The translations under genes were made by a program, and so were the position numbers. From Euprymna scolopes (Eukaryota): 64,000 nucleotides of DNA. Location: the NCBI GenBank assembly GCA_053919585.1, contig CM132795.1. One strand, 5' to 3'. Each line of letters begins with the position of its first letter. Position 1 is the stretch's first letter. This document shows, piece after piece, positions 15,592 through 58,650 of this stretch. The notes under the pieces were generated by a model. The model ran no database searches. It was not told the origin of the DNA and saw nothing but the letters and a program-made list of their open reading frames with translations.

Positions 15592-15630
15592 TTGATTGGT
15601 CCAATTCTTTCTTTGTCAGTTATAAATAAA
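15592..15630 (+). promoter_or_regulatory. Putative core promoter of family copy 1 (ATTGG at 15595, TATAAA at 15621)
   Basis: TTGATTGGTCCAATTCTTTCTTTGTCAGTTATAAA; motif and spacing recur upstream of the paralogues; ATG lies 84 nt after the TATA start. Confidence 0.6.
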
Positions 15631-15704
15631 ACTTTTTTTTTTAAAAATCTAAAAGAAAAAGAAATGTATAAATACAATACAACGACACAATTGCCGATGT
15701 CATC

Positions 15705-15944
15705 ATGGAAGTTGGTACAACTAATCCCATCAACGCGGACAATTCTCAAGGCCCAACCGGAGCCGTTCCTACTGTGGATATCTTTTTCTTGTCGAAAATC
15801 TTCAACTAAATCCTTCTAGTTCTTTTTATCATTGTTGTGATTCTTTTTATGCGGTTCTGCTTTTGGTTCTGTAAGAAATGTATCAGTCGCACAGTCATTT
15901 ACTCCACTATTAAAACCTCGGAGTGTACCTTAGTTTTGAACTAA
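15705..15944 (+). pseudogene. Small single-pass membrane protein family, copy 1, with an in-frame TAA at 15807-15809
   Basis: Manual translation MEVGTTNPINADNSQGPTGAVPTVDIFFLSKIFN*ILLVLFIIVVILFMRFCFWFCKKCISRTVIYSTIKTSECTLVLN*; the TM followed by RFC matches the paralogues; absent from the ORF track. Confidence 0.65.
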
Positions 15945-16229
15945 TTTGTCAACCGGACGATTCACCTTAATTCAAATATTTTTAGTCTTTAAACTGAATT
16001 GCGTATAATATTCCACTGCATGATTTTTTTTCTTAAAGTTATTTCTTGGTCTAAATTTAAATATTCTTGGCCTAATTTATTTTGAACACGTTCGGCAAAA
16101 TATCTGAAGTCTTATACAAGCGCCTACATAAAAAAAAAACTTACATGCTGTAAAATAAAAATAAGCCCCACTCCAATCTCCCTCATCTTAATGATGTACT
16201 TCCATTTCTTGGAATAAAGATTTTTTACC

Positions 16230-16776
16230 AAGAATTCTATAGTTTTGGTTTCGATTATAGCTGATTGCACTAAAGTAATTTAATTTTGTTATAAATAATT
16301 GTACTAATACTACTTCGGTTTCGATTATAGCTGATGACGCTGCAATAACTTATTTTTATAGAAAATTTTATCAATAAGTTCTCAAGTTCTGGTTTCGCTT
16401 CCAATTATAGCTAAAAGAACTAAAGCTATATATTTGAAATTATGTTTCGATTCCAACTGATAAACCCAAATTATATAGATATATTTGCGAATTTTGAAAT
16501 CGCAACTTTATAATATATAAATTCGATAGAACATTAACAGTATAACATGCACGAATTAAAATATATTTATGCATATTTTACGACATGGCTACGCCAGGGG
16601 TCCCTACTAGCTTAGATAACTACTTTTGCAGTTGTAACAAAATAGCTACAATAACATCAGAGCGTCTCCTTTTACGTTGAACATCTACAGAATGCCAACA
16701 TTTAATATATTACGTATAAATTAGTCCCCCGTGGGATTTCCACAAGACCCGCTAGTGAAACTATATTACTATATTG
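16230..16776 (+). mobile_element. Non-autonomous Helitron-like repeat (family H3)
   Basis: Internal GTTTCGATTATAGCTGAT subrepeats; ends GTGGGATTTCCAC hairpin ...GCTAG^T; homologous to 17379-17790 and 46889-47440. Confidence 0.65.
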
Positions 16777-17378
16777 TGTTTTTAGTTGAATCTCTGCTCC
16801 TATATCTTTGCACGATTTGATAATCTACAGAAGATTAAACTGAAGTGAGTACGCACAGACTGCATGAAAGTCGACAGTAGAATAATTTTTGAAAAAGTAA
16901 AACGAATTTTGGGATAATTATAGCCTATAAACCTAACATAAAGGAATTACGCACTTTTGGGCCACACGTTAAATCCGGCTGATAACTGCCTAACAATGTT
17001 AGACCCTGAATGGAAAGATTTTCCTAACAATTTCCAATTGAAAAAAAAAACTGCAGAAAACAGGTTTTTATAAACCAAAATGATTTATATTGAGGCATAT
17101 TCGATGGTAAGCTTCCGGTGTGTATTTCCTGACAAAATATTTAAATATGCTTGATGATACCAGTGCCCCAAACGCTAAAAAGCAAATGCACAATTTAAAT
17201 GACATAAAATACCTAAATACTAATCAGGATACTTTTAAGCTTTAAATTTCTTTTTTAAATTTAAAGTAAACTCTTTAAAATACATAAAATTATCCAGCAT
17301 ATTAGAACAAATCTGGCAATTTGAATTCGTATTAAATAGTCCTTTAATTGTGGATAGTCTGTTTAACCTCAAATAGAC

Positions 17379-17683
17379 CTAGCGGGGCCTGTTGAATTTC
17401 ACAGCGGACTCTTTCATATGTAATGGATTCATGTTTGCATTCTGTTGATAGTCTGCATAAATGGGAACGCCATTTTATTTTGTAGCATTTTTGTTAAAAC
17501 TGCGAAAGTGTCTAAGTTAACAGAGACACCTGACGCAGCCCAGTCGTAAAATACGCTTAAACACATTATATTTTGATTTATGCAGATCCCGTATATATTA
17601 TCGGCAATTATCTATCAATTCACTTTAAAAAATTGTGATCGCAATATGACTTTGGTGCATTATTGTAACTGAAACCAACTGAA

Positions 17684-17730
<47 letters not shown>

Positions 17731-17790
17731 TTCCCTCAACCATAATGGAAACTGAAACCAAAACTTTAAAGAATTATTGGTATAACTATT
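17379..17790 (-). mobile_element. Helitron-like repeat family H3, inverted copy containing (TA)n
   Basis: CTAGCGGGGCCTGTTGAATTTCACAG... is the reverse complement of the end of the 16230-16776 copy. Confidence 0.65.
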
Positions 17791-17904
17791 GAGAGGAAAT
17801 AAATGACTTGAGTGCCATCAGATATAACCCAAACAGAAACTGATGAAGAATTTTGGTAACATTATTTATTATAAGAAATAGATAATATTCTATGATATAA
17901 ATCT

Positions 17905-18740
17905 TATCTATCTGTTTAAATATATCTATATATGTATGTTTGTATATCTGCCGATAACTTAAGACAGAGGAAACCAATGTTTACATGATTGAATTCTTTT
18001 TGGACCGCGACCCTCCGGACGACAAATATCGAAAAATTGACAAAAAGAATTCAATCCTTCGCCCTCAACTTGGCCCTTGTCTATTGGGAGGGTTCGCTTT
18101 TTTTCGCCTATATTTTTGAAAGTCATCCCCTCTTTTCGATTGACTAGCCTTAATTTAAACATTCGTCACTTCCGGTTTGACGACGGGCGCACCGGCAAAG
18201 ATGTCACTTTTTTTCACGATCTGTTCTTCCTTCACAGTACGAGTTCGAGACTGCCAGCCTACTACCACTTTTGTCCCCCAAAACACACCTCAAATACTCG
18301 GGCAATGTCGGGCACACAGGCTATTCTATAATATAAATCTCATCTCTCTGTTTAAATGAATGTGTGTATGTTTGTGTGTCTTTTCAAAACTTTCGACAGA
18401 GGCGACGGATTTTCATGAGATTGGTGTCATTTTGAAGATCGACATCTCGAAAGACAAATGTCGGAAAATTGGCCCAGAACATTAATTCTCTCAACTGGGC
18501 ACTTTCTACAAGGAGGGGTCGATTTTTGAGAGCCATTTTAGCAAGGCATCGTATCGGTTGGATTGACTTTGTCTAATTTTAATGTTTCGAACTTCCGGTC
18601 CCATCGTGTAGTAGCGACAGGCGATTTTCTTTCTTTTTCTTTTCAGCCTTCTCGCCACGGGTTCTAACCATTCTACCTTCTACCAGCTTGCTTAACACAC
18701 CTCCAAACACCCGGACAACGTCAGACACCCAGGCTTATTG
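17905..18740 (+). mobile_element. Two tandem diverged copies of Helitron-like repeat family H2 (~17905-18325 and ~18326-18740)
   Basis: Both contain GTATGTTTG...GACAGAGG...ACAAAT.TCG.AAAATTG and end with a CGG(G/A)CAA(T/C)GTC-type hairpin; homologous to 30742-31155. Confidence 0.65.
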
Positions 18741-19404
18741 AATATAAATATGATACACATACAAGATGTTATATTAAATATAAATGGCAATCTTACAAGA
18801 AAGGATTATCCATTGTTGGATCCGGTAAATTAGAAAGATAAATTAGTAATAAGATACTTAAAATATAAATATAGAATTACATAAGAAACACAGAAAAAAT
18901 ATGTGTTCAGTGTTTATTTCGTTTCTTAAATGCGTGTAGTTTAGATTAGACGAATGTCATTATATGATTACTTTCGTTTGGCACTGTGCGACGCATAACT
19001 AATGTTTTAACAACAAAAAAAAATCTATAAATTGATATTATATTCACAGTTGAGTTCTTAAATTAGACGATTATTTTGGCAGTATTAAGTGTAACAATGC
19101 GCGATTTAATATTTCAAAGAGATATTTTCCACGAAGAACTTGGTATATAGTCATTTTTGTTGAATATAAAACAGCGCAATTAAATATTACAAGAATTATA
19201 ATCTTGGGATATTTATTAACATTTTGTAGTTTGTAAAATAATGCATTTGACATTTTGATGCTGTAATTTAGTAAGAGTTCTTCTTTTTCGGGGCTTATTA
19301 GTTTCTTATACCCGGGTTAGCAAATTTAAATTTTCTTATATCCGGATTGTTGCACTGTACATTAACACTGTTTCTATTTTGGGACCAGAAAAATGTCTCA
19401 TATA

Positions 19405-19670
19405 ATCACAGCATAACCACATTTCACACACCGGTTTCCGTCAGATCACTGAAGTTAAGCAAAGATGAGTCTGGCCAGTATCAGATGGGTGACAATTTGG
19501 GACTTCCAGCTGCTGTGTGTGCTCTTCGCATTTTTTCCAGTGGTACTGGACTTTTCCTTGCCAGTGGATTCAAACAGTGCCGATTCAGGAGAGGTATTGT
19601 TGGAGATTGCGTCACCCTTGCCTCATGATTACACACGCAGCTGCCCCTACAGGGGGATATCCTTTGTTTT
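19405..19670 (+). mobile_element. 5S rRNA-derived SINE (SINE3-type), head plus body
   Basis: 19405-19520 is collinear with eukaryotic 5S rRNA (GATCACTGAAGTTAAGCA box A-like, GATGGGTGAC box C-like, GCTGTG end); the downstream body is shared with 23285-23520. Confidence 0.8.
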
Positions 19671-19955
19671 TCGAGACGGAACGGACGCATCGACTTATAT
19701 TCGTGCCTCTTATATCCGGGTTATACAAATCAACGTTTTGCGAGTGGGCTCATGTTAAAGACTGAGTCCTGACAAGTTGAGAAGCGAGATGTCTGTTCAC
19801 ATTATATTTAAACATTTACAGGGTAGTACTGTCAGGAAAACAGGAACAGGGTTAGAATTCCAACGTCAAGCAGTTCTAGGGAAGAAAGCATTAAATTTGA
19901 AGACTTTCCGTCATTGAAAGACTCAACTGAGAGTGTGCAGGTGAGAGTTTGCTGC

Positions 19956-20092
19956 NNNNNNNNNNNNNNNNNNNNNNNNNNNNNNNNNNNNNNNNNNNNN
20001 NNNNNNNNNNNNNNNNNNNNNNNNNNNNNNNNNNNNNNNNNNNNNNNNNNNNNNNNNNNNNNNNNNNNNNNNNNNNNNNNNNNNNNNNNNNN
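19956..20092. other. Assembly gap (N run)
   Basis: Run of Ns. Confidence 1.
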
Positions 20093-20700: not shown

Positions 20701-21325
20701 TAAACAGCTATCATCGACAATGATCCCCTAGAACCATAAAGACAACGTTTTTATCCATTGCGCCATGTGCCACGAAGATTGATCAAGGTTTTTATTGTAT
20801 AATTTATGAATCTAATTATGTTTTTATCTGGTCTTCCATTGTCGGGTCCCTACTGAATGCTATCGAAAAAAAAACAACAACTATGAGAACGGGATAACAG
20901 TTCGTAAAAGGATGAATACACTGTATCCTTAATCAAACAATTTAACCAAATCACAATGTCTTATCTAAGAGGCCAGCTATTTTCTAATAAGCAAAAATCG
21001 ATGTTTGTATTCGATTCAATGAGTTCAAGTGTGCATTCAATAAATATCATCAGGTCTTTGGGTTTTTTTCGATTGCAATTGAGCCAAGATTAAAGTGAAC
21101 CATAAAAAATGCTTAAATAAGCCGTGCATTTTACTATTACCATTTAAATCTTAATTAGTAGTTATTTATAAATGAATCTTCAAATAAATTACTACATTGT
21201 AGACCCCGCACATGAGTCCGCATGAGTTGTTATATGTTCTGGGATCGAACCATGTATCTTTGTATTACAACCGTGTAAAGATAAATGGTGACCAAAGAGT
21301 GTAACACTTTTATAAGAAGAATTAT

Positions 21326-21365
21326 TTGATTGGTCAAACAACTATTCTTTTTCTGTTATAAAAAG
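21326..21365 (+). promoter_or_regulatory. Putative core promoter of family copy 2 (ATTGG at 21329, TATAAA at 21357)
   Basis: TTGATTGGTCAAACAACTATTCTTTTTCTGTTATAAAAAG; ATG lies 78 nt after the TATA start. Confidence 0.6.
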
Positions 21366-21434
21366 AATGGATCCGGTAAATCTGTTCATCATTGACTACG
21401 ACTTTGAAAGAAAATATTCCTAGAGGATCTTAGT

Positions 21435-21695
21435 ATGGAAGGAACGCAAGATAACACTACCTTGCAGAGTAACGATAGTTTCACGGATCTGCCTACAACT
21501 ACGTTATCACCGTTCTCTGACGAATACCAATTTGATTTCAAACTTCTGTTCGCTTTTGTTTTTGGTGTAGTTTGTTTCTTTGGCGTGGCATTCCTAGTGC
21601 GTTACTGCATTTCCTTCAGTAAGAAACCTATCGGGATGTCTAGGGTCGTGACTGACCCAGAACTGTGCACTGACAAGATTTTGGATAATGTATAG
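21435..21695 (+). CDS. Small single-pass membrane protein, 86 aa (family copy 2)
   Basis: ATG with A at -3 and G at +4; sequons NTT and NDS; S/T/P-rich acidic N-terminus; TM LLFAFVFGVVCFFGVAFLV followed by RYC..KK; 13/29 ungapped identities with copy 4. Confidence 0.75.
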   Translation: MEGTQDNTTLQSNDSFTDLPTTTLSPFSDEYQFDFKLLFAFVFGVVCFFGVAFLVRYCISFSKKPIGMSRVVTDPELCTDKILDNV

Positions 21696-23723: not shown

Positions 23724-25460
23724 TTATCAAGGCCAATAGGCCACTCAAGGATAAGGGTTAAAGAGTGTACAGTAGAAATTGGACAATATATTACTCATTA
23801 GTAATGGAAATTCGATAAATTGTTTAACTTAGTTGGAACGGCTCATCAAGAACTTGGTTACGTTAGACTTGAAGACAACCATATTGTAGTCAGCAGCAAA
23901 ACGGAAGACAATTCCACAAAACGGAAGACAATTCTAAGAAAATTTGTTCATGGAATCTACGTTTAGGTTTAGCCAGATAAAGAGTTGGTTGATTATTTAT
24001 AGTGTTTTAAGCTAGACAAGTATTTCTTGTGAAAGTTTGGCGAGGAAGGACCATAGACTGAATCTCAGTCGAACACTTTCCATGAAAATAACGATACATT
24101 AAGAGACAAACTCGCAACATCTCTTCTGTGAGATAGAGGTTGCAGAGAAGAGAAAAGGACATCTCCTACGATGCTACGAAGTCTATTTTTAACTATATAA
24201 AGGCAGGGCAAGTCCTTTCTAGCAGCTCCTGCCAAGATGTGGCAACAGTATTCCATCCTTGGACGTACCTGGCTCTTATATAGATAGAGAATTGCATGAG
24301 CAGTGAGATATCTACTTGATCGATAGAAAGATCCCACCATTTTTCCACGTGTTCAATTTAAGATCAGGAGTAGTGGTCAAGCCTAGAAGTCACTTATCTA
24401 AAAAAAAACACTTCCGTCTCCAAAATGCAAACTGTAGAGAATAATTTAAGTTTTAATAACAGCGTTCAAAAGACTTTTTTAAATTAACAGTTAAAAGAAA
24501 AGCGTGATTTTATTCTGGACTTTAGCTAGTCACGTTTTAAGAAACTTGCGATATAGAAGAAAAGCGGATAGGGGGGGGTCTTCCGAAACTTAGTTGGTGA
24601 CGTTATAAGTAATTGCGAGATAAAATGGAAGCAGGATTAAGGGGTGGGGACTGAAATAATAATATAATGGATTGAGTCTATGCAATATTTAAGATCAACT
24701 TGGTAGATATATAAACATTTATGGACGAGAAAAGCTAGCATTTAATAAAACAATGCATTAAAATTAATAAGACGCCCTTTTCCCCCATTGCACCACGCAT
24801 TCAAGATAACAGGACAGAGAATCAAAGATCTTGTCTGTTTCGTGTCTTAGAAATGTTGCCATAGATGTTAGTGCCGTCTGGATAAATATCTACGAATGAT
24901 CTAAGGATGTGATTTAGATCATTGGTGCAGATCAAGTAGAGTTGAACCCAGAATGGAACTGTGAGGGACGCCGCAATTAATACTGTCAGCTTCTGATTTC
25001 TGCCCATCAACAACTGCTCTTATGAATCTATCAAAGAGGAATGATTTAATAATTAAGCACTTTTCAGCTATTGTGTAGCAAACCTTTATGTCATTCCTTA
25101 TCGAAGGCATTTGCTATGTCAAGAGCACTTGCCCTAGAAACGAAGCCTACGTCGAAAGATTCACTTATCTTGTGAGTAATGCTGTTAGAACTTCATCTGT
25201 AGATCTAGACGAGCAGAATGTTTGCTTTTTACGATTAGTTTGTTTTTACTGTGTCCGACAGTCAACCCATCTGAGTCACTTGTCTTTTTTCCCGAACACC
25301 TAACGAGTAGTTAGGTTTGTAGATATCTCAGATACCTCGTAATTGGGCTAAAAGATATTGCACCTTTGTTTTAATTTGGTCAGGCCAAGAGTACTATTGG
25401 CGAGACTCTTATTTAGTATCGGAAAATGGGAATCATTGTAATCGCCAAGAATGAGATTTT
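23724..25460 (-). mobile_element. CR1-like LINE (family A), internally deleted copy with unrelated sequence at ~24390-24780
   Basis: On the minus strand: LILGDYN (APE-like, ~25440), ALDIANAFDKE*HKGLL (~25080-25130), GVPHSSILGS, LYKSQVRPRMEYCCHI, then the 3' UTR at 23724. Confidence 0.85.
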
Positions 25461-26149: not shown

Positions 26150-27320
26150 TCATTGCTTAAAGGGTTCTTTTTTATATCTTGGGAATTAAATCATTTCTTT
26201 CCGATAGGTTCATAAGAGTAGTGGTTAATGGATAGAAATCAGAAGCCCACAGTATTAATTCTGGAGTCCCCCAGGGGTCCATCCTGGGACCAACTCTCTT
26301 CCTGGTTTACATCAATGATCTCCCAAAACACATACTTAAGTCATTCGTTGACATCTATGCTGATGACACGACCATTTATGGCAACACATTATAGGCCGTA
26401 AATGACAAAGTGGTTTCTAATTCTCTCTCCTCTGAATCTTGAGCGCGTGGTACAATGGGGAGAAAGGTGGCTGGTCATTTTAATGCATCCAAAACCAAGC
26501 TTCTATCTTTATATCATCAACGCTCTGATCCCTATCTGGCATCAATTGAAATGGATGGCTCTCGTCTTGGGGAGGCTCCATGTTTTGACAAGCTTCTGGG
26601 ATTGACCTTTACTCCTGATCTGAAATAGAACACGTACATCAAATCTGTTGCCAGGGACGCTGGAAAGATGGTGGGATCCTTCTACCGCTCCAGAAGATAT
26701 CTCACTGCTGAGTCAATTCTCTATCTGTATAAAAGCCAAGTACGTCCGAGGATGGAATACTGCTGCCACGTCTGGGCAGGAGCTGCTAAAAACAGCCTAT
26801 CCTGCCTTGACAGAATACAAAATAGACTTCGTGGTTTAGTGGGGGATGCCCTTTTCTCTTCTCTGCAGCCTCTCTCCCACAGAAGAGACGTTGCGAGCCT
26901 GTCTTTTTTTATCATTATTTCCATGGCAAGTGCTCGTCTGAGCTCCCAACTCTGGTCTCCCCTCGCCAATCTTCCACGAGAAATACTCGTCTGGCTGAAA
27001 CTACTGTCAATAATTTTCCCCACTCTTTATCTGTGCCTAAATCCAAACGTAGATTCCATGAGCAGAGCTTCTTTCTCAGAAGTGCACGATTGTGGAACTC
27101 TCTTCCGTTTTCCTGTTTCCCACCTGACTACAACTTGGATGTCTTCAAGTCCAACATAAACAAATTCCTGACAAACCGCCCTCTTAAGTAAGACACTCTA
27201 TCAAATCTCCAATACTAATGATTACTATAATACTATCTCATTGATTACTGTACACGCAATAACCCTTATCCCTGAGTTGTCTCCGGGCCTTGATAAGTTG
27301 TGACCCCCATGTAAAAAAAC
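26150..27320 (+). mobile_element. CR1-like LINE (family A), 5'-truncated; C-terminal half of RT, 3' UTR and A-rich tail
   Basis: GVPQGSILGPTLFLVYINDLP, DIYADDTTIY, LYKSQVRPRMEYCCHVWAGA; stops and frameshifts present; best-preserved copy in the window. Confidence 0.92.
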
Positions 27321-28684: not shown

Positions 28685-28710
28685 ACACACACACACACAC
28701 ACACACGCAA

Positions 28711-28762: not shown

Positions 28763-28764
<2 letters not shown>

Positions 28765-39933: not shown

Positions 39934-41491
39934 GAAGTGATTTCCGAAATTGATATGCCCGATCACAAGTATTACGAATCAATAGTGATAATGTTTTAAG
40001 AAGTTGAGCTTAATCTACTAGCGAGCATATTATTTAAGTATTGTTAATAATGAGTGTGATATGTCCTGTGCCTCTTCACTACTGCTAAGCGTCTAAATAC
40101 ATACGAATTATGATTCTTTATGCAGAATTCAAGTTGGCAAACTATATCAGCAACTGAAATAGGGGAAATCATGTTTGTTTTGTAAGTTAGAAAAAGTAAA
40201 AAATATTAGATAATGCAATTTATTTATAACTATAACATCAACTATTTTTGTCACATTATCATCATTTCATATCGTATTAATCCAGATATTTCATTGTTGC
40301 CATTATTTCACCGATAATTGTTTTGTTCTGGTAGGATTCTTGCAAGAAAGCGTTTGGATAATAAAGGCAAGGACCACATGAAGATCACAACAATTCTAAG
40401 TGAAAGTGATTTTTGTGGATAGAAGTGGATTGGAAATTTGGAGACCCAGGGCGTCAGTTCGTGTCGTTAACTACTGAATCACACATTGTATCTAATTTTC
40501 CGTACAGAGAGTAATCTTCATATGAATTTATCAATTATATAAGGTATAACTAAACATGAAACCATGCTAGTATAATTTAAAATATGGCATTTTTTTTAAC
40601 TATACGAGACAAAAATGTAACACGTTAGGTTACCCATCGAACTCAGAATAATAGGCAGAAGGAATGAGTCTAAGTTCAGTTAAACTTTAAAAATATACAA
40701 AGTTAGTATTGTCTTACTATATGCTAAGTTCATTCCTTCTCTCATTCATACAGTCTTACTATCTATCTATCCTATCTGTCTGTTCTCCCTCTTAATTGCA
40801 GGGTAAATAATATAAAAGCAAGAAGTAAAATGGAATCTTATACACTCGGCTGCTAGCAAATACACACCACATCCAAGTGGGCGTACACACTTTTTTGTTC
40901 TGTCTTTATATAAAGTATAACATGAGAAATTCAAGAACATATTATTGTCAACCATGATTGGCCATATTATGTTGGTGAATAAATAATTAATAATCACAAA
41001 CATATTTAGAGTCTTTAACATTATAAGATATTCTTTTTATTTGAATCCGTAGCAAACTGATTTATTAGCAAATAGTATTGTCATTTCTTTCAAATACAAA
41101 TTCTTATCGTACTTCTGATTATAATGCTGCATTTTAATCGAAAAAATATATAGACAATAATGGAAGTGAGAGTGATAGACGCCGTATTAAATACGAGCAG
41201 AATACAAAGGGCACACAGTGAGAAATTAAAAGTCTTAGACAGAAACATAATTAGAGATGTGTCACACGTTGTGTCAATTATTTTGAACAATTTAAATTAA
41301 ATTTGTGATAGTTTATTATCTTTTAGCATGTGGTTTGTATGCTAAAATATATAAAGAAAACGTATTTGAGAAAGATATTCGATGAAAATAGTCCAGGGTA
41401 AATGTATTAAAAGTGTAGAGTTTGAACGCGGTATCTTTTACTCACAAATGTGCTATGTTAACCAAATATTTTGGGTGTTATTAAAATATTT

Positions 41492-41527
41492 CCATTGGTT
41501 TTAACCGTTATCCCTCGAGTATAAAAC
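41492..41527 (+). promoter_or_regulatory. Putative core promoter of family copy 3 (ATTGG at 41494, TATAAA at 41520)
   Basis: 26-nt ATTGG-to-TATA spacing as in copy 1; ATG lies 81 nt after the TATA start. Confidence 0.55.
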
Positions 41528-41600: not shown

Positions 41601-41858
41601 ATGGGTGAACTAAATAACGTGACCACGAACATTACTAAGACGTTAGTGAGGATTTTGAACTACACAAGAGTTTCCTGGCTTACCTCAGTTACACTAATGT
41701 TGAACCACAACCCGATAATTCATTATGTCTTCTTTGGCTTACCTATTTTTATAGTCCTAATAGCTTGTCTGTGGTGTTGTTATTCGTTCTGCCGAAAAAA
41801 TGCAAACATCCCAGAACCTGTTCCTCTTACAGAGAATTTTTGTAATTTTAGAAAATGA
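41601..41858 (+). CDS. Small single-pass membrane protein, 85 aa (family copy 3, most divergent)
   Basis: First ATG at 41601 (the track start at 41562 is TTG); sequons NVT, NIT, NYT; TM YVFFGLPIFIVLIACLW followed by CCYSFCRK; GL-x10-WCC fits the family register. Confidence 0.65.
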   Translation: MGELNNVTTNITKTLVRILNYTRVSWLTSVTLMLNHNPIIHYVFFGLPIFIVLIACLWCCYSFCRKNANIPEPVPLTENFCNFRK

Positions 41859-44267
41859 TGTTTGTAAAATCAATACCTGGCAATTTCATTCGATTCGATG
41901 CTTTCGGCACTTATTGAAGTATCCTGCTTTGATTTTTTTTAATATTTATATGCATTAGTAATATAAAAGGATTAACTTTTTTTTCTGAACTCTTTGCTAC
42001 ATTAGTTAGCAATCTCTCTGCTCTAACCTCTTATGCCTCCTACAAAGCCTTAATGTAACTGATACATTTTGTGCGAAGTGTGTCCTCTTTCCATATGTCT
42101 TAATGAATTGTATAAAATATCGTTATGATTCATCTGAAGATTTTTTTAATTAGTTTTAAATCTCCCTTGTTTATAGTTTTAATTTTAGGATTGACAATGC
42201 TGTTTACCTTTGCTATACAGAACGTTGTTCAACCTCGTATAGCTAATCCAGATTGCATATTATGAAGTGGTTTGACTTTCGAAATCCAAACTACTTGCGA
42301 GTTTTATGTTTTACTGTAACGGAAACGTTTATTGATTCGGTATCTATTCGGATTAATGTACCACAAGATGTTCGTTTCTTTGCAACTTCGAAATCCACTC
42401 TTTTTTTTCTTTAGATCTACTTATCCCAGCATTTCATCTTTCCAGTAACATTTTCTTCGTGACTATGTAACCTGTACGAAGCTGAAAATACAAGAAATAA
42501 TCCAGTTTGGAACACTTCGTTGTGATCTGTACCAAACAGCTAATTTTATAATACATTAAATTCAGATGTTGACGTGCTTTATCTAATGAATGACTGTTTG
42601 CAGAGTCTCTAATCTAATTAGAGGAGAATGTTATATTTGTAATGCATAGTACAACAACTGAAGTAAATGCCTGTGCAACAGTTCTTTCTTTCTGAACTTT
42701 TTATTAAGACTTTGACGTAATTCATTCAGGAACGCGTTTAAAAATTCTTGCACATTAGTATTAATATTTACGTTAGTAATTTCGTCCCTGATCAAAATCA
42801 GTTCCTAATCTTATCTGTACACGAACTATGTATACACATCGAAACCTGCAAGATATACTAAATATTTTATACTCTAATTTTATTAAAGTTTTAAAATTAT
42901 TAATTTTTCATCATACGCATTTTATACCATTCGGTTTAAGGTTCTTAGCGAGGGTAGTCTTAGAGCCGTACCATTTTAGTACTGCTTCGATAAAAAGCGT
43001 TTACGCTGTAAGAATTTTAGGCATCTGTTTATTTACTATGTAAATTGTTAACTTCCATATTTCTGAAATAGAAAATACTATTTCAATGAATATACAGTGC
43101 CACTCTGTAGGATATCTAAACTAATTACAAAAGTTGCTTTAATTTTGACCTTCATTTTAAGATCAATCTCGGATTCGTCATGCGTTTCGAAACAGCAGCC
43201 TTGTTTTTTTTATCTTGAAATTGTGTTCATATAAAAATTACAGACGCTCTTTTCGCTACCACTCATATTCGCTAAACATTAGATCTTGTGTAACACAAAA
43301 TTGAAGAGAATCATAAATAATATTCGAATATAAATGATTGATAGCTTAGAAGAGAAAGCTGAGCCTTTTTTCTATAAATGCCTGGGTAAATTAGTTGCAT
43401 GCTTGAGATGTCGAAAATAGCAGGGCTCATGTCTGCCATGTAATTTTCCTCTAGCCATATAAATTTAAAACCGAATCTTGTCTCCCTCTTTTGCCATTAT
43501 TTTAGTCTCAATTTTGTGAGCGCTTGATAGAAAGTGGCTACATGTCTTGTCCAGAGTCACTGTCATACAAACAGCTTAAATATTTTAAATCTTTGTTTTA
43601 ACAAAAATAAAAATCAGTTACCAATCAAACACAGGGTAATTCTGAACTTTTACCAACATTTGGTATAAGTGTTGGAGTCACTGTTCCCGTTAGTCTGATT
43701 TGCAATTGTTAAGACACGCTTATCAGTTTTTGTAGTAACCTGATGCAACGTAGTAGCTCTGTAGATCGATCCCCGTATTTGCTCGAAAGTCTGAACATGG
43801 AAAACTTTTTTAGTTTTTTTTTTAGTAAAACTCAATTTACTACTTTCGATTAACAATAATCCTAGTGGTTGTAATGATATAAATGCAATTTACTGAGCGC
43901 TCTTCAATGGAGTACATACTATGGTCGTCAACAGAATGGAAGATTCTGTGAAATTCTTATTTACAGACTGTAAATGTTGCTTGTGCCTTGCAGGTATTAT
44001 TTTGGTCTCACGACTGTAGTCTAAGTAACAGGAATGGTTTTACTTTTTATAAACTACTAAATCAACATGAACACCATATATATATATATAAGCCTGAGGA
44101 ATCCAACAGTGGATGAAACGCGGAATATTCAGTGTAGCTTAATCGCCATATTTTATGAATTACTAACTAGCTCTACCTACGTATTGAGCACTTTTGAAAT
44201 AAATACTTAAAGTTAACCCATAAATCTATACTTTCGTATATTAATTTTATGTGAGTAAATGAATTAG

Positions 44268-44317
<50 letters not shown>

Positions 44318-47101: not shown

Positions 47102-47135
<34 letters not shown>

Positions 47136-50459: not shown

Positions 50460-50717
50460 TTACAGATGACTGTCTTCAACTAAATGGATACTTCGCTGTA
50501 GAGCCACAGTTGTTGTCTTGTATTCCCAAAAGCAATAATAACAGAACCGAATAAGAAAAGCCATAGCTAACAACAGCATTACTCCACCAAGGATATAGAA
50601 TCCTAGTTCAAAGTCAAAATGAAATTCATTAGAGGGCAAATGAGACGTCGTTATAGTCAGCTTGGCAGTTGCAGCGATCAATTTCATCGTTTCATTATTA
50701 CTTTCTCCTCTCATCAT
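50460..50717 (-). CDS. Small single-pass membrane protein, 85 aa (family copy 4; alternative in-frame ATG at 50747)
   Basis: MMRGESNNETMKLIAATAKLTITTSHLPSNEFHFDFELGFYILGGVMLLLAMAFLIRFCYYCFWEYKTTTVALQRSIHLVEDSHL; sequon NET; EFHFDF and GV-x10-RFC are shared with copy 2. Confidence 0.72.
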   Translation of the reverse strand: MMRGESNNETMKLIAATAKLTITTSHLPSNEFHFDFELGFYILGGVMLLLAMAFLIRFCYYCFWEYKTTTVALQRSIHLVEDSHL

Positions 50718-50772
50718 GAGACCGCCGACGTAACAACCTCCCCACATTATTTTGAGAAACTGTTAGAATTAT

Positions 50773-50810
50773 GTTTTCATAAATGACAGATAAAATATTT
50801 GGAACAATCT
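50773..50810 (-). promoter_or_regulatory. Diverged core promoter of family copy 4
   Basis: Reverse complement AGATTGTTCCAAATATTTTATCTGTCATTTATGAAAAC aligns with copy 1 TGATTGGTCCAATTCTTTCTTTGTCAGTTATAAAT; each box carries one substitution. Confidence 0.5.
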
Positions 50811-53289: not shown

Positions 53290-54460
53290 TTGGGAATTGT
53301 TCATTAAACACAAATATCACCTAATATTAGTGGAGAGGCATTGTATAAAGTGTTAACAAAATTAGATGTTCCACACAGTCTAAATGCAATGGTATCGTTT
53401 ACTTAGGTTTATGAAAGGTGCGGTGTTGTTGAAAAGGAAGTTTGTGTAGAAAGGCGCATAACAAGGTTACGTCATGGCTCCGATTATTTTCCCATTATTT
53501 CCACTGTGTTGCTTTAATACTTAGTGTTTCAAAAAGTGTAGTTATTTTCAAATTTCGCACAAGTTATGGTTTCTTCAACAATTATTGATAAAAAACTGAA
53601 GGCAAGGGTCAATTGCGTTCTCATTAGTGATCTCCTGTTCAGAGATGTTGTTCTCGTTGCAACGTCCATTGAATAAGCTCATCAACTAATGAATCGGTTC
53701 TCAAAGGCCTTTAAGGCTTTTAAACCTATGATATTAATTATAAAGAAAACAGAAGTTATGAATCAATTTGCTTCTAGACTAACACATAACGAAAGGATCG
53801 AGCAAAACTTAACATCCAACTCTTCTCCTTACAGTGGATTGCAAAACCTTTTAGTATGTCAGTGTTTACATAATTCGAAGGTACAGTAAATACATATGAA
53901 GTGCTGAATGATGAAATTGACAGTATGATAGTACAATAATACAATTTCTTTGGTAATCTATGTCATTGCCTTAAATATAGAGATTATCAGAATAGACATC
54001 AACACTCAGGTTTATAATGATGTTGCCCAGTTAACGCTTTTGTTTGATTCTGAAACATGGACCTCTCGCAGATATATCGACTGCCGTATTCCTTAAACCA
54101 TTCCATAATTTTATATGTAGCTAGACACTTACAGACAAAGTCTTAAATTATAAACTTTTTTGGAAAAATGTAAGATTGAGGGTATGGACGCATTCTTTTA
54201 TCAAGTCAGAGATTAAGTCAAAATAACTGATCAATAATTCCGATGTATATTAAGCATTAAATTAGTAAAGAAATACAAGGGCACACTTAAGTATAATCTT
54301 TCAGCACACAATATTTTCATTTAAATTTTTCCTGACCTGGCCTTGATATGAACAAATGTAGACGCACGTGTTAGAGGAAATCTAAATTTCTTAAACAGAT
54401 CGTATAAAACAGTGAACGAAACAAAGATCAAGGACCGAGATACGTGCGGTACAAAGAGCA
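53290..54460 (+). mobile_element. Old RTE-like LINE remnant (RT domain to C-terminus)
   Basis: QGYVMAPIIF (RT QG motif), DLLFRDVVLVA (decayed FADD region), LMNRFSKAFKAF..KKTEVMNQ, LLFDSETW; heavily decayed. Confidence 0.65.
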
Positions 54461-54609
54461 GCCGTCTCCGAGAGTAATCACTCATATCCGATGTATGTTC
54501 TTTACTTGTAAGATTTAAATGTTGTATTCGACATAAGAATCTGAATTTTTCGGGTGAGATTCATATGTCTAAATCGACAGGAGAGTCTATCACCCCCCAC
54601 ACACGCACG

Positions 54610-54654
<45 letters not shown>

Positions 54655-55339
54655 GATTTTATTCATCTTCATACGTGTTGCATTTATTTTCAGTATTTAC
54701 TTAAACAGTGCTCAATACGTAAATAGAGCTAGTCACTAATGGAGTATAGAAATAACAAAGAATCTGATTAACTAACTTGCGAATTCAACATAACATGAAT
54801 ATATAAAAATACAATTAATAACTATGCGATAGAATAGCCTGTCAAATTCTCATTAGGACCAAGCGAAGAAAATTATGTGTTGTTTAAGTGACATCTGTAT
54901 TTTCAAAACTTACTATTTAAAGTTGTATGTTGTTCTCGCTTTTACGTTGATATGAAACTCCTACGTTTTTCTATTTAAAGATTTTTTTTCATGTTTTTTT
55001 TTGTATAGGACACACGATCTTTTCATCCAACACTTTATTATAAAAACAAGGAGCGAGTCCTTGAAAACAACGTGCCATTAGGCATAATAAGAATGAGGGA
55101 AGATAGGGTTCGCAGGTCATTCATAAGCTTGTTTATCACTCACCATAATACCTCATTCATTCTGTGGGCCTAAGCTATTTAAAATATATCCATATAAATG
55201 CATGTTTTTTAAAAAAATTTTTACAAAAACATACATTTTTTTACAAACCAAACAATATAACTTTGAATTTACAAAGGACCAAACATGGATTTACAAACAT
55301 AAAAGAAAATAAAGCAGGAGAGTGTAGAGCGGTCGCATG

Positions 55340-55770
55340 GTCTTCTTAAGAAAATCAAATCATATGGTATCACTGGAAGAATACATAACGTAATTAAATC
55401 CTTCTTAAGAGAAGAATTCAGGTTTTTCTCGACGGTCGTACAACTAAACTATATGAGATAAATGCGGGAGTACCTCAGGCGTTTATCCTTGGACCTTTAT
55501 TATTTCTAATATTCATAAATGACCTCCCTGATAAAATTGTCTCTGAGATGGGTATATTTGCTGACGACACCATGCTCTATAACAAGCACAAGGGGCAAAC
55601 AAATGAACACATATCTAAGAAAATGGCAGACACACTAGAGGAAGACCTTCAACTGTAGTGGATTGGGGATATGAATAGATGGTCACACTCAATGCAGCCA
55701 AGACTAATCTTTTTTCTTTCAATAATTACAAGAAACATTCTCTATCCCCAATAGCAATGGCAAAACACAA
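55340..55770 (+). mobile_element. CR1-like LINE RT fragment, different subfamily
   Basis: INAGVPQAFILGPLLFLIFINDLPDKIVSEMGIFADDTML. Confidence 0.85.
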
Positions 55771-56479
55771 GTGTAGTGTGAACAGACATCTTGTTGCTCA
55801 GCTCCCTTCATAATGCCCCTGCAACTTATGTCCTCGACAGTAGCCTCCTACTACAAAGTGTCACTGTGCCCTGTTTGGGATGAAAGTTGAATAAAAAAGA
55901 AGCATGAAAATAAAAGGAAATAAACATCGAATGACGGGGATGGGATATTACTAAGCCTTAAAACAACCCAAAATAAAGAAAGATATCAATAAGAAAAAGA
56001 AATGAACTAAAAATAAAGGCTAACTATTTTATATTAGTAAGGGCTCTCTCAACCTATTCCTTGTTCCGGCTAATGCCGAAAACAAGAAATACACTTAAGA
56101 GAGAGTGGGCAACCTTCGGCCAAAAGAATGGTGAAATGGGTCTTGGGGTTTGGCGTTTCGTCCAGAATAAGTACCATTGGGGTAAGTCGAGGAATAGAAA
56201 AAAACTTTATCGGAAAAGGGCATTCTATAGATATTCTACCGCAAAATAAATTGTGGACGTGACTCATTCACGTAACTGATGGATGCTTTTTGGAGGGTCT
56301 TTGCTGTAAGGACCTAATGGCGGCGTGTGTCATGTTTATGCTGGAACACATACTCAAACTTGTTTCAAACAAATACGCATAAACAAGCAGTGTGAATAAA
56401 CTTATGTTTGAATATCGCGAGATGCAAATTTCATCGCTTACATCTGTTTTTGATTTTAAGCTGATAGTTAAAATGCAAA

Positions 56480-56900
56480 ATCAGATCGTAATGAGAATGC
56501 GGAAACCCCGACATCCATCTCTATACATGAAAGCCACACTACCAGTCTAGCTACACTTAAGATTGCTAAGAAAACCATTGATTCCTCCCTTGATCAATGT
56601 TGTAGACAACTGACTCCAAATCCAGATACCTCACTCGCTCGGGATGATGTGAGCCGTTATCCTACTGACATACGTCCAGAATTCACGCAGTTTGAAACTT
56701 TTGAGGAAAGCGTGTTCTACTGTTTCTATTTTTTCATTCAGACAACAGGAGCAAAAGGGTCGATACCAATCCCGAAGCGCATTTCATTGGTGCATCGAGC
56801 ACTGCAAACCAATCGCTATGTCAAAGACTATTCAGAATTATTGGGAAAACTCCGGCCTGGGAACTGAGAATGCACCCCCCGACAGCTGTAGTTGATTCGC
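56480..56900 (+). mobile_element. Possible decayed Gypsy-like pol remnant
   Basis: LKIAKKTID and SRYP resemble the Gypsy RT N-terminus; weak similarity only. Confidence 0.25.
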
Positions 56901-57303
56901 TAGTGCGCCCGAAGCAGTCTCCACCACTAAATTTCAATATAGTTCCTTTTTAGACTGGGCGAAACCTCGGCAACGATTAAAGCGCAGCGCGGCATTCATT
57001 AAAGAACTGCGTTTGGCCTATTTGGCTTACAATGGCCATCGGTCAAATGGTCAGAGATGAAGTTAGGAAAAGCGGCCCCGACCTTAAGAGCCTATTCAGA
57101 CTCCTGTGTCTGAGTGCTACTTAGGAATGCTAATTACTCAACATGTGTGTGGCTTTTCAGGTTTCGCATTTCCAAGTCTCTATCAATCATATGTTGAGCG
57201 CGACCTGTCTACCAACAGACGGTCTCCTTTCGTTTAATTTCATGACTAATAGCAATTTTATTGTCACAATAAGAACATATGATATTCAATTGTAAGAAAA
57301 ATT

Positions 57304-57352
<49 letters not shown>

Positions 57353-57559
57353 AAAGATGACGTCATTTTATTTCCGTTTCATGAAACCATCTACTAGTTG
57401 ACCAGTTGCATACAAATCTAAAGAGCGATGTCTGAAAGTGACACAATGTTTAACGAGCGGATTCGGAGATGAACTGCTGTTAAACGTAAGCTCTCTACCG
57501 ATCAAAGTTATGGCAACAGCACCAGTACCCTCAAAATGCATAGCTGAATTGCCACGAAT

Positions 57560-58105
57560 AAACACGACATGCTCAAGCTTATGATCTTTGCTGTGATTTC
57601 AAGTAAGAATCACATCATGCCACCTCACATCTTCGAAGTCGGCTTGAAAGTCAACATCGAAATGTACCTGGATGAGCTGAAGAGTTTGGTGATCCAATGA
57701 TGTAATCACGTGACCGCTGGAAGACCCTGAGTGTGGCATCAAGGCTTACTGTTGGCCCACATGTCTAAAGGGAGCCAGACTTGGCTTCATAAGAAGTGCT
57801 ACGACTTTGAACCTTCACTCACTGCCACCCTCTTTTCCCAACCTGAGCTCGCTGGACTACTTCGTTTGGGAATACGTGGAGAACATCACATACATGAAAT
57901 CCCACAACACCAAAGACAGCCTGGTCGCCGCTATCCGGTGATTCCGTACCTATATTGAGACTGTGATTGAGGCTAAAAGTGGCTACATTGAATATAGCTC
58001 GGCCCCTTAACATAATCAAGGAATCTGAATTCATTTTTCAAGAAAAAATTAAATAAAGCTGTAGTATAGTTTTTAATAGAAAGAACAATTTATCGTTCGA
58101 CCCTG
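57560..58105 (+). mobile_element. Tc1/mariner-superfamily (maT/DD37D-like) remnant, 3' half
   Basis: IMPPHIFEVGLKVNIEMYLDELKSLVI, LDYFVWEYVENIT..SHNTKDSLVAAIR, IEAKSGYIE*; ends in TIR-like GACCCTG. Confidence 0.75.
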
Positions 58106-58170
58106 TTTGTGTGTATATATATGATATTCGAATTCATGTATATATCAAACAGTTAAAGTTAAAAATAGTC

Positions 58171-58367
58171 TCACGATTTTACGGCCAACTATTCTTCTGG
58201 CCTTCGTCAGGTGGCAACCGCGACGGGATAGGGACTCTGAATCTTTCTGATTGCATCCACTGCAAGGCAGTAATTGCAGTGGATGTAATCAGGAGATTCA
58301 GTGTTCTTATCCCGTCGCGGTTACCACCTAACGGAAGCCAGAGGAATAGTTGGCCGAAACGTAGTGA
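58171..58367. repeat. ~197-bp imperfect palindrome (95-bp arms, 8-nt loop) built from Penelope-like terminal motifs
   Basis: Arms pair along their length, for example CGGCCAACTATTCTTCTGGC with GCCAGAGGAATAGTTGGCCG; loop GGCAGTAA at 58266-58273. Confidence 0.9.
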
Positions 58368-58631
58368 AACAACTAAGAAAAAGATGAGGATAATAGTCCG
58401 CAATAAATAAAATTAATAATGAATTCCAATTAAATTATATTTAAAAATAGAGGTTCAATATTTTTTTAATTTAAACTCTAAATGTCTCTGTTATTTGCAA
58501 AGACCTTGATATAACCAACATTATTAAAATATTTAAATTCTTCTTATTTTTTCTCTACGGGGCTTGAACTTGGTATATTAGTATTGCTAACTTTTAAATG
58601 TAAATAGTGACCTACAATTCAAAATAAAACA

Positions 58632-58650
58632 TTTTGTCAGTTATAAAACT
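58632..58650 (+). promoter_or_regulatory. Putative TATA box of family copy 5 (TATAAA at 58642)
   Basis: TTTGTCAGTTATAAA is identical to the 15-mer at copy 1; ATG lies 85 nt after the TATA start; no ATTGG at -26. Confidence 0.55.

What the first reader, a model, noticed from the sequence alone, without database searches (positions are those of the whole stretch)
15592..58650. Shared CCAAT-TATA core promoter at fixed spacing upstream of the family members
Seen in sequence: ATTGG-to-TATAAA spacing is 26 nt (copy 1), 28 nt (copy 2) and 26 nt (copy 3), and 27 nt for the variant ATTGT/TATGAA pair (copy 4). TATA-to-ATG distances are 84, 78, 81, 64 and 85 nt. TTTGTCAGTTATAAA is identical in copies 1 and 5, and GATTGGTC is shared by copies 1 and 2. 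Established knowledge: ATTGG is the reverse CCAAT box bound by NF-Y. Inference: this non-coding evidence is independent of the protein alignment. It suggests real, possibly co-regulated genes with short 5' UTRs that arose by DNA-level duplication rather than retroposition.
Basis: partly seen in the sequence, partly recalled or inferred. Interest (0 to 1): 0.75.

Follow-up and report, generated by a model that had tools for sequence, protein, structure and literature searches.

The report
Conserved promoter of 32-gene membrane-protein array
An inverted CCAAT box sitting about 26 bases ahead of a TATA box is kept upstream of most of 32 tandemly duplicated genes for tiny single-pass membrane proteins in a large AT-rich animal genome; this marks them as real, probably co-regulated genes of an undescribed lineage-specific family, although the promoter type itself is classical.

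Summary
The count inside the window is not significant on its own: 3 loose ATTGG/TATAAA pairs against 1.3 expected. The positions of the pairs, and the rest of the family, are significant.

A profile of the five window proteins finds 32 members. All lie in 1.3 Mb of one chromosome-scale contig (C13, 110.42-111.72 Mb). The 12-mer TGATTGGTCAAA is perfect in 11 of the 31 tabulated members. In 20 of 31 it scores within 2 on the match scale (12-mer mismatches, with core mismatches counted twice), against 0.5% of random windows. It lies 24-30 nt (mode 26) before a TATA box, which lies 46-85 nt before a Kozak-type ATG. The sequence between the boxes is not conserved. None of 77 control ORFs carries the pair.

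Members outside the window also share an AATAAA about 590-680 nt after the stop, followed by a GU-rich element. Older paralog pairs give dN/dS of 0.4-0.6.

The best reading is a compact Pol II unit: an NF-Y-type CCAAT box, a TATA box, an apparently intronless ORF of 70-146 aa (most 78-102) and a poly(A) signal. It was copied by DNA-level tandem duplication and kept by selection.

The proteins match no Pfam family and have almost no database relatives. NF-Y binding, the transcription start site and expression were not tested. The promoter is ordinary; the gene family appears new.

The parts
15475..15480 (+). Copy 1: upstream block TTGAAC (the TYGAAC block shared by many paralogs about 80-120 nt 5' of the CCAAT box)
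15593..15604 (+). Copy 1: inverted CCAAT box, TGATTGGTCCAA (1 mismatch to the family 12-mer)
15621..15626 (+). Copy 1: TATAAA, 26 nt after the start of ATTGG and 84 nt before the ATG
15705..15944 (+). Copy 1: coding region, interrupted by an in-frame TAA at 15807-15809 just before the TM helix (pseudogene, or a truncated product)
21245..21251 (+). Copy 2: upstream block TCGAACC
21327..21338 (+). Copy 2: inverted CCAAT box, perfect TGATTGGTCAAA
21357..21362 (+). Copy 2: TATAAA, 28 nt after ATTGG and 78 nt before the ATG
21435..21695 (+). Copy 2: intact 86-aa ORF with an acidic, N-glycosylation-bearing N-terminus, one TM helix and RYC plus a basic tail
41422..41427 (+). Copy 3: upstream block TTGAAC
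41492..41503 (+). Copy 3: inverted CCAAT box with an intact ATTGG core (41494-41498) and diverged flanks
41520..41525 (+). Copy 3: TATAAA, 26 nt after ATTGG and 81 nt before the ATG
41601..41858 (+). Copy 3: intact 85-aa ORF; an ATTAAA lies at 42555, 699 nt after the stop
50799..50810 (-). Copy 4: decayed CCAAT box (core ATTGT)
50776..50781 (-). Copy 4: TATGAA variant of the TATA box, 27 nt after ATTGT
50460..50747 (-). Copy 4: intact ORF (95 aa from the ATG at 50747, 85 aa from the ATG at 50717)
58564..58569 (+). Copy 5: upstream block TTGAAC
58642..58647 (+). Copy 5: TATAAA, 85 nt before the ATG. The CCAAT core is absent; ACAATTCAAAAT stands where the box is expected
58727..58939 (+). Copy 5: intact 70-aa ORF
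59653..59658 (+). Copy 5: AATAAA 716 nt after the stop, followed by a GT-rich stretch; candidate poly(A) signal

Best explanation
**What it is.** The motif pair is the conserved proximal and core promoter of a tandemly duplicated, lineage-specific gene family. The family has 32 members in 1.3 Mb of contig C13, five of them in this window.

**The unit (shown).** Each unit is a compact transcription unit of about 1 kb, apparently without introns. From 5' to 3' it contains:
- upstream blocks that are kept in part (TYGAAC, ATTAAMA, AATAATGA);
- an inverted CCAAT box, consensus TGATTGGTCAAA;
- about 20 non-conserved bases;
- a TATA box 24-30 nt (mode 26) after the ATTGG;
- a Kozak-type ATG 46-85 nt after the TATA box;
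- an ORF of 70-146 codons (most 78-102);
- a 3' region of about 600-700 nt;
- AATAAA followed by a GU-rich element.

**How it works (inferred).**
- NF-Y binds the CCAAT box, whose flanks fit RRCCAATSR.
- TBP/TFIID binds the TATA box.
- Transcription then starts about 30 nt after the TATA box, which gives 5' UTRs of about 20-55 nt.
- The shared architecture gives the paralogs similar regulation.

**How it arose (inferred).** The array grew by DNA-level tandem or segmental duplication that carried the promoter along. Purifying selection kept the two boxes and their spacing while the surrounding DNA decayed.

**The products (partly shown).** They are small single-pass membrane proteins. The N-terminus is acidic, often carries N-glycosylation sequons and has no signal peptide. 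An F-D/N-Y motif lies just before the helix. Cys/aromatic residues and a basic YKKR-type cluster follow the helix. By the positive-inside rule the N-terminus would face outward.
For: **Family and location.** Profile searches of the whole 5.9-Gb genome place every significant hit on C13 between 110.42 and 111.72 Mb.

**CCAAT box.**
- The 12-mer is perfect in 11 of 31 members. It scores 2 or less on the match scale (12-mer mismatches, core mismatches counted twice) in 20 of 31. It lies 73-113 nt before the ATG (147 nt in L037, which has a poly(A) insertion).
- Random 130-nt windows reach that match 0.5% of the time.
- An unbiased 7-mer enrichment test puts ATTGGTC, GATTGGT and TTGGTCA first, with p from 2e-15 to 6e-14.

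**Footprint.** Information content peaks at GATTGGTC and again at the TATA position. Elsewhere it stays low, apart from smaller subfamily peaks just 5' of the box.

**Spacing.** ATTGG-to-TATA spacing is 26 nt in 13 of 23 members, range 24-30.

**Controls.**
- 16 of 31 family members carry the exact pair against 0 of 77 control ORFs.
- Genome-wide, the strict motif is no more common than its reversed control (54 against 54). Even so, 9 of the 54 hits fall in the 1.3-Mb array, where about 0.01 would be expected.
- Two of those hits lie just upstream of members that the second profile search found.

**Evidence for real genes.**
- Kozak context: a purine at -3 in 25 of 28 and G at +4 in 22 of 28.
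- Upstream ATGs number 10 against 19.7 expected.
- dN/dS is 0.39-0.56 at dS of 0.77-1.3.
- AATAAA lies 580-700 nt after the stop in 18 of 26 non-window members, against about 5 expected. It is depleted before that point, 10 against 25 expected.

**Duplication mode.** Homology in close pairs runs from -240/-560 to +960/+1120 relative to the ATG.

**Trans factor.** The NF-YA domain PF02045 is encoded at two loci in the genome.

**Literature.** TATA boxes lie about 30 nt before the start site, and GATTGGC/GCCAATC are NF-Y words (PMC2715254).
Against: - There are no expression, start-site or binding data, and no exact-match transcript contigs were on record.
- Paralogs are not independent samples, so the p-values overstate the significance.
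- Two window copies lack the CCAAT core, and about 7 of the 32 members have no recognisable pair: microsatellite or other insertions in L029, L031, L038 and L068, and no usable pair in L024, L032 and L034.
- Recent pairs show dN/dS of 0.7-1.1, so constraint on the coding sequence is weak in the short term.
- With the start site taken as 30 nt after the TATA box, the CCAAT box would sit near -56. From memory, that is closer to the start than is typical of TATA-containing vertebrate promoters.
- The single possible relative from another organism (P0002, contig L080) has a TATA-like box 55 nt before the ATG, but no ATTGG in the 50 nt of upstream sequence available.
Confidence: 0.8

Rival explanations
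1. It is a real conserved promoter, but NF-Y is not the factor that reads the box. The conserved word GATTGGTCAAA overlaps a GGTCA nuclear-receptor-type half-site, and other CCAAT/Y-box-binding proteins exist.
For: Conservation runs past the pentamer into TCAAA. No binding data are available. The spacing to the TATA box is shorter than I recall for classical NF-Y/TATA promoters.
Against: The most conserved positions are exactly G-ATTGG-TC. That is the reverse complement of GACCAATC and fits the NF-Y consensus RRCCAATSR (recalled; the words GATTGGC/GCCAATC are in PMC2715254). The base before GGTCA is T rather than the purine of RGGTCA. NF-YA is encoded in the genome.
Confidence: 0.12
2. The similarity is left over from recent duplication or gene conversion, with no selection on the motifs. 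The ORFs may be decaying copies.
For: Several members are young duplicates (L026/27/29/37/42; L021/L023; L074/76/77) with dN/dS of 0.7-1.1. Copy 1 has an in-frame stop.
Against: Lineages whose proteins share only 15-41% identity, and whose dS is 0.77-1.3, still carry the perfect 12-mer, while adjacent positions fall to background. Gene conversion would also homogenise the flanks. The spacing, the Kozak context, the poly(A) signal position and the open frames are all kept as well.
Confidence: 0.05
3. The CCAAT/TATA module belongs to a mobile element: a retrotransposon promoter of the kind noted elsewhere in this genome, or a tRNA-derived SINE suggested by the B-box-like GGTTCGATCCC read on the opposite strand upstream of copy 2.
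For: A dispersed repeat with twin inverted CCAAT boxes and a TATA box is abundant genome-wide. Other notes of this scan describe CCAAT/TATA cassettes in Penelope-like elements. The TYGAAC block resembles a B box read on the other strand.
Against: All family hits are confined to one 1.3-Mb array rather than dispersed. Outside the two boxes the family promoters show no similarity to the dispersed repeat. ARAGORN finds no tRNA in the window, and a permissive Rfam scan of the copy 2 promoter finds no tRNA-like match.
Confidence: 0.02
4. The motifs co-occur by chance in AT-rich DNA.
For: The in-window count of the loose pair (3) is not significantly above the simulated expectation of 1.3. The strict motif is not enriched genome-wide.
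Against: Position relative to the ATGs, recurrence in 24 further members found by protein profile, 0 of 77 control ORFs with the pair, and 9 of 54 genome-wide hits within 0.02% of the genome.
Confidence: 0.01

Closest known systems
Classical NF-Y (CCAAT/Y-box) plus TATA Pol II promoters of animal genes (for example globin, hsp70, histone and MHC class II Y-box promoters; recalled from the literature)
   Same: An inverted CCAAT pentamer with NF-Y-type flanks (reverse complement GACCAATCA), a TATA box downstream at a fixed distance, no conservation between the boxes, and a short leader to a Kozak ATG.
   Different: The boxes are only about 26 nt apart start to start, which puts the CCAAT near -56 if the start site is 30 nt after the TATA box. 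As far as I recall that is at the short end of the known range. Neither binding nor the start site has been tested here.
Clade-specific tandem gene arrays of coleoid cephalopod genomes (Albertin et al. 2022, PMC9068888)
   Same: A megabase-scale tandem array of a gene family with no similarity to known proteins, in a very large AT-rich genome. Other notes of this scan call the genome a cephalopod. [quoted passage not shown]
   Different: I did not verify the organism. I could not check whether this array is among those listed in that paper. The conserved promoter and poly(A) architecture are not described there.
Small single-pass surface or regulatory membrane proteins (SMAGP, glycophorin, opalin, TMEM154; FXYD regulators of the Na,K-ATPase)
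   Same: Size of 70-110 aa, no signal peptide, an acidic glycosylated N-terminus, one TM helix, and Cys plus basic residues next to the membrane. Protein-language-model neighbours are SMAGP, TMEM154 and glycophorin clusters. The aromatic-x-aromatic-D-Y motif before the helix resembles the FXYD motif.
   Different: No Pfam family reaches threshold and PF02038 (FXYD) is not listed at all. No FXYD chain appears in a profile search of PDB at E up to 10. The resemblance is one of architecture, not shown homology.
Dispersed repeat of this genome carrying twin inverted CCAAT boxes and a TATA box
   Same: It contains GATTGGTC followed by 18 nt and TTATAAA, the same motif pair and spacing class as the family promoters.
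   Different: It has hundreds of dispersed copies on many contigs, a second CCAAT box 32 nt upstream, no family ORF downstream, and no similarity outside the boxes.

Membership tests
NF-Y-bound CCAAT box | Invariant CCAAT pentamer (either orientation) | tested here: met
   ATTGG is intact in 23 of the 28 promoters tabulated. The exceptions are ATTGT (L022, which is window copy 4), ATTAG (L079), ATTCG (L048) and core absent (L024, which is copy 5, and L034).
NF-Y-bound CCAAT box | Flanks fitting RRCCAATSR (consensus recalled; NF-Y words GATTGGC/GCCAATC in PMC2715254) | tested here: met
   The reverse complement of the consensus TGATTGGTCAAA is TTTGACCAATCA, which contains GA-CCAAT-CA. The flank positions carry 1.1-1.4 bits.
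NF-Y-bound CCAAT box | Location in the proximal promoter, roughly -50 to -100 from the start site | tested here: inconclusive
   The start site is unknown. If it lies 30 nt after the TATA box (PMC2715254), the box is near -56.
NF-Y-bound CCAAT box | NF-Y subunits present in the organism | tested here: met
   PF02045 (NF-YA) matches above its cut-off at two loci, on C14 and C23. NF-YB and NF-YC were not searched.
NF-Y-bound CCAAT box | Physical binding by NF-Y and dependence of transcription on the box | not testable with these tools
   Needs EMSA, ChIP and reporter mutagenesis.
TATA-box core promoter | TATAWA at a fixed distance upstream of the start site | tested here: inconclusive
   TATAAA (one mismatch or none) is present in 25 of 28 promoters. 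It lies 46-85 nt before the ATG (119 nt in one member with an insertion) and at a fixed distance from the CCAAT box. The start site is not known.
Tandem (DNA-level) duplicate gene family, as opposed to retrocopies | Paralogs share sequence upstream of the transcribed region and are clustered | tested here: met
   The promoter boxes and upstream blocks are shared. Close pairs align 240-560 nt upstream of the ATG. All 32 members lie in 1.3 Mb.
FXYD family (PF02038) | A significant match to the family profile, including the FXYD motif and the conserved TM glycines | tested here: not met
   PF02038 does not appear for any of 14 family proteins at E up to 1-5. No FXYD chain appears in the PDB profile search at E up to 10.
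tRNA-derived SINE or B-box element upstream of the promoter | A recognisable tRNA-like structure or sequence | tested here: not met
   ARAGORN finds 0 genes in the window. The permissive Rfam scan of 21150-21440 gives no tRNA match.

The most novel reading that the evidence does not exclude
The array encodes a previously undescribed, clade-restricted family of micro-membrane proteins. They would act as FXYD-like or SMAGP-like accessory subunits or surface-coat proteins, and a compact module of about 250 bp (upstream blocks, NF-Y box, TATA box) would switch them on together in one cell type. That module would also be a ready-made short promoter for transgenesis in this animal group.
Probability: 0.15. 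Interest if true: 0.6.

Novelty: new member of a known kind. Interest (0 to 1): 0.4.

Why it matters
Non-coding signals alone (CCAAT box, TATA box, Kozak context, poly(A) signal) identify a 32-member family of very short genes. Gene finders and protein databases largely miss these genes: only 3 weak hits turned up among 1.84 billion representative proteins.

The result gives exact, testable predictions: start sites about 30 nt after each TATA box, mRNAs of about 1 kb without introns, and dependence on NF-Y.

It also gives a natural series of promoter variants for dissecting what the boxes do: intact pair, CCAAT lost, TATA weakened, and microsatellite or poly(A) insertions.

If the genome is a cephalopod, as other notes of this scan say, the work adds a defined example to the clade-specific arrays of unknown genes reported for coleoids. 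It also offers a short candidate promoter for reporter constructs. The promoter logic itself is textbook.

Tried and rejected
**Protein family assignment**
- Pfam scans of 14 family proteins found nothing above threshold.
- A word-index protein search with a 15-sequence profile gave no hit.
- The exhaustive profile search gave 3 weak hits.
  - P0001 is a tandem-repeat ORF and P0003 an Ig-type receptor tail; I judge both unrelated.
  - P0002 looks like a family member. Its contig holds only 106 nt upstream of the ATG: a TATA-like box but no ATTGG, so the case is inconclusive.
- The FXYD idea is not supported.
- The protein atlas gave only protein-class neighbours such as SMAGP, TMEM154 and glycophorin.
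- An atlas search with the reverse-transcriptase fragment gave no usable taxon.

**Expression evidence**
- Exact-match look-ups of two family proteins in public assemblies, aimed at finding transcripts and so start sites, found nothing.

**Mobile-element and tRNA ideas**
- The tRNA/B-box reading of the upstream TYGAAC block was rejected.
- A hammerhead or other RNA family in the dispersed twin-CCAAT repeat was not found at the gathering threshold.

**Method notes**
- My first poly(A) test required the hexamer in identical alignment columns and found nothing. Per-sequence positions then showed the clustering.
- The p-values for the upstream blocks come from patterns chosen by eye. They are descriptive only.
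- For copy 1, the pieces on either side of the in-frame stop were handled separately.

Full report
**Setting.** The window is G000:C13:111662001-111726000, from a 5.9-Gb assembly of 925 contigs. It is about 33% G+C and carries LINE-type reverse-transcriptase fragments and microsatellites, so it comes from a large animal genome. Other notes of this scan call the genome a cephalopod. I could not verify that and use it only as context. Nothing here looks human. The five N runs lie between gene copies. None touches a motif, a spacing or an ORF, and I made no attempt to fill them.

**The observation.**
- ATTGG-to-TATAAA spacing is 26, 28 and 26 nt for copies 1-3.
- Copy 4 has ATTGT and TATGAA 27 nt apart on the minus strand.
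- TATA-to-ATG distances are 84, 78, 81, 64 and 85 nt.
- TTTGTCAGTTATAAA occurs only at 15612 and 58633.
- GATTGGTC occurs only at 15594 and 21328.

First-order Markov simulations of the window give 1.3 loose pairs against the 3 observed, p about 0.16. Genome-wide, the strict forms of the motif are hardly or not at all more frequent than their reversed controls: 354 against 289 and 54 against 54. Frequency alone therefore proves nothing. The position of the pairs does.

**The family is much larger than the window shows.** A profile of the five window proteins, followed by a second profile of 15, finds 32 members. Every significant hit lies on C13 between 110.42 and 111.72 Mb, in two sub-clusters and in both orientations. 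29 of the 32 have intact ORFs.
- The proteins are 70-146 aa long; most are 78-102 aa.
- The N-terminus is acidic, and 18 of 31 carry N-x-S/T sequons there.
- A motif (P)-x-F-D/N-Y-E/Q-x-x-F/Y lies just before one strongly hydrophobic helix.
- After the helix come W/R-Y/F-C-Y and a YKKR-type basic cluster.
- There is no signal peptide. By the positive-inside rule the N-terminus would face outward.

**The promoter in the extended family.** The 24 members found only by protein similarity serve as a test set for the promoter.
- In 20 of the 31 tabulated members the best site scores 2 or less on the match scale (12-mer mismatches, with core mismatches counted twice). In 11 members the 12-mer TGATTGGTCAAA is perfect. 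The site lies 73-113 nt before the ATG, and 147 nt in L037, which carries a poly(A) insertion.
- The same search reaches that quality in 0.5% of random 130-nt windows.
- An exact ATTGG/TATAWA pair in the right place is present in 16 of 31 members and in 0 of 77 control ORFs of at least 60 codons.
- The 32nd member (L082) also carries the pair.
- A 7-mer enrichment test that assumes nothing about the motif ranks ATTGGTC, GATTGGT, TTGGTCA and TGATTGG first, with p from 2e-15 to 2e-13. TATAAAA follows at -60 to -85.
- In an anchored alignment of 18 non-redundant promoters, information peaks at G-ATTGG-TC (1.1-1.95 bits) and again at the TATA position. It is lower everywhere else, and near background between the two boxes.
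- Spacing is 26 nt in 13 of 23 promoters and ranges from 24 to 30. TATA-to-ATG distance is 46-85 nt, median 64.
- Of the 54 genome-wide matches to GATTGGTCAAA-N12-24-TATAAA, 9 lie in this 1.3-Mb array, where about 0.01 would be expected. Two of them lie just upstream of members (L074, L078) that the second profile search then found.

**Selection rather than residual similarity.**
- Lineages that keep the perfect 12-mer have proteins only 15-41% identical and synonymous divergence of 0.77-1.3. Neutral decay would have destroyed a 12-mer at that divergence, as it destroyed its surroundings.
- The young pair formed by copy 2 and L023 is 90-97% identical from -200 to +160, against 77-87% further upstream and 65-87% further downstream.
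- Gene conversion would not leave two short islands and a conserved gap length.

**Independent signs of a real transcription unit.**
- The start codons have a purine at -3 in 25 of 28 cases and G at +4 in 22 of 28, in a genome with 16.5% G.
- Upstream ATGs in the predicted leaders number 10 against 19.7 expected.
- dN/dS is 0.39-0.56 for the old pairs and 0.7-1.1 for the young ones.
- 18 of the 26 members outside the window have an AATAAA 580-700 nt after the stop, against about 5 expected. It is usually followed 20-30 nt later by a GT-rich element.
- The hexamer is depleted in the 580 nt before that point, 10 against 25 expected.
- Homology between close paralogs ends near that point and 240-560 nt upstream of the ATG.
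- Together these define a unit of about 1.2-1.7 kb with no sign of an intron.
- Within the window, copy 5 has AATAAA 716 nt after its stop and copy 3 has ATTAAA 699 nt after its stop. The other three copies have no signal at a conserved position.

**Upstream of the CCAAT box.** Many members keep three further blocks at fixed offsets from the 12-mer: TYGAAC at about -82 to -89, ATTAAMA at about -70, and AATAATGA at about -52. I chose these patterns by eye, so their p-values are only descriptive. On the other strand the TYGAAC block reads like a tRNA B box in copy 2. No tRNA-like element is detectable, so I do not interpret the block further.

**Mechanism.**
- *Shown:* the architecture, its conservation and its link to the ORFs.
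- *Inferred:* the box is read by NF-Y. Its reverse complement GACCAATCA fits the NF-Y consensus (recalled; NF-Y words in PMC2715254). The genome encodes NF-YA at two loci.
- *Inferred:* TBP binds the TATA box and transcription starts about 30 nt downstream (PMC2715254). This gives leaders of about 20-55 nt.
- *Inferred:* the fixed gap of about 26 nt suggests that the two complexes must sit in a set arrangement.
- *Plausible but untested:* co-regulation of the paralogs.

**State of the window copies.** The window holds the decayed end of the family.
- Copy 1 has a near-perfect promoter but an in-frame TAA before the helix.
- Copy 4 has ATTGT and TATGAA.
- Copy 5 has lost the CCAAT core.
- Copies 2 and 3 are intact.

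Elsewhere in the array, promoters are disrupted by (TA)n microsatellites (L031, L038, L068), an unrelated insertion (L029) or a 38-nt poly(A) run in the leader (L037).

**Comparison with known things.**
- The promoter is a classical CCAAT/TATA type. Only the short spacing is slightly unusual.
- The proteins match no Pfam family and gave no hit in the word-index search.
- The exhaustive search gave three weak hits among 1.84 billion representatives. One 101-aa ORF from an unidentified sequencing run looks like a relative.
- The FXYD-like look of the motif before the helix is not backed by profile searches.
- Protein-language-model neighbours are generic small single-pass glycoproteins.
[quoted passage not shown] This array would fit that description if the organism is as the other notes say.
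- A dispersed repeat with twin CCAAT boxes and a TATA box exists in the genome. It shares only the boxes with the family promoters.

**Verdict.** The promoter kind is known, while the gene family seems undescribed. Interest is moderate.

Noticed in passing
window 19404-19521 (+): A full-length match to 5S rRNA (RF00001, 50.4 bits, above the gathering score) sits isolated between copies 1 and 2, next to the gap at 19956. It could be a 5S gene, a pseudogene or a 5S-derived SINE.
   Followed up: no
window 24065-24340 (-) and 26668-27159 (+): Two ORFs encode closely similar C-terminal fragments of a non-LTR retrotransposon reverse-transcriptase region (MVGSFYRS...SLQPLSHRRDVASLS), in opposite orientation.
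   Followed up: no
L001, L005, L007, L015, L016 (about 1440-1535 in each); many other contigs of G000: An abundant dispersed repeat carries twin inverted CCAAT boxes (CTGATTGGTT, then CTGATTGGTC 32 nt later) and TTTATAAA 18 nt after the second box. It has no Rfam match at the gathering threshold. It may be the retrotransposon promoter cassette that other notes of this scan link to hammerhead motifs.
   Followed up: partly
G000 C6:7359889, C7:64474885, C11:14659177, C21:112029838, C23:40200079, C24:21726113 and others: A second dispersed repeat begins GATTGGTCAAATAAAGAATTTCATG and ends in TATAAA. It accounts for about a fifth of the genome-wide strict-motif hits and is unrelated to the family.
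   Followed up: no
window 15497-15547: The promoter of copy 1 contains a tandem duplication of about 20-30 nt (AATAAATTGTGCCATATTAA occurs twice). This explains why its TYGAAC block lies about 30 nt farther from the CCAAT box than in the other copies.
   Followed up: partly
L033, L070, L074, L076, L077 (between TATA box and ATG): One subfamily shares an E-box, CACGTG, about 33 nt after the TATA box. That is near the predicted start site, and the E-box is preceded by TTTTAG.
   Followed up: no
L037 (C13:110591.7 kb), L029, L031, L038, L068: These are natural promoter variants. L037 has a 38-nt poly(A) run inserted between the TATA box and the ATG. In L029 the promoter is replaced by unrelated G+C-rich sequence 44 nt before the ATG. 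L031, L038 and L068 have long (TA)n or (TATAAAGA)n arrays where the boxes should be.
   Followed up: partly
L080 (Logan contig from run ERR3431203), gene at 107-412: A 101-aa ORF from an unidentified public sequencing run has the family's look: an MA start, N-glycosylation sequons, SDY before one TM helix, then CSSCKKRKH. It matched the family profile at E = 3e-4. It may be a homologue in another species.
   Followed up: partly
L023 (C13:111634.4 kb) and L034 (C13:111592.4 kb): Two members have C-terminal tails extended to 143 and 146 aa. The L034 tail is rich in acidic repeats of the D-P/V-L-x-T type. L023 is the sister of window copy 2, whose ORF stops at 86 aa.
   Followed up: no
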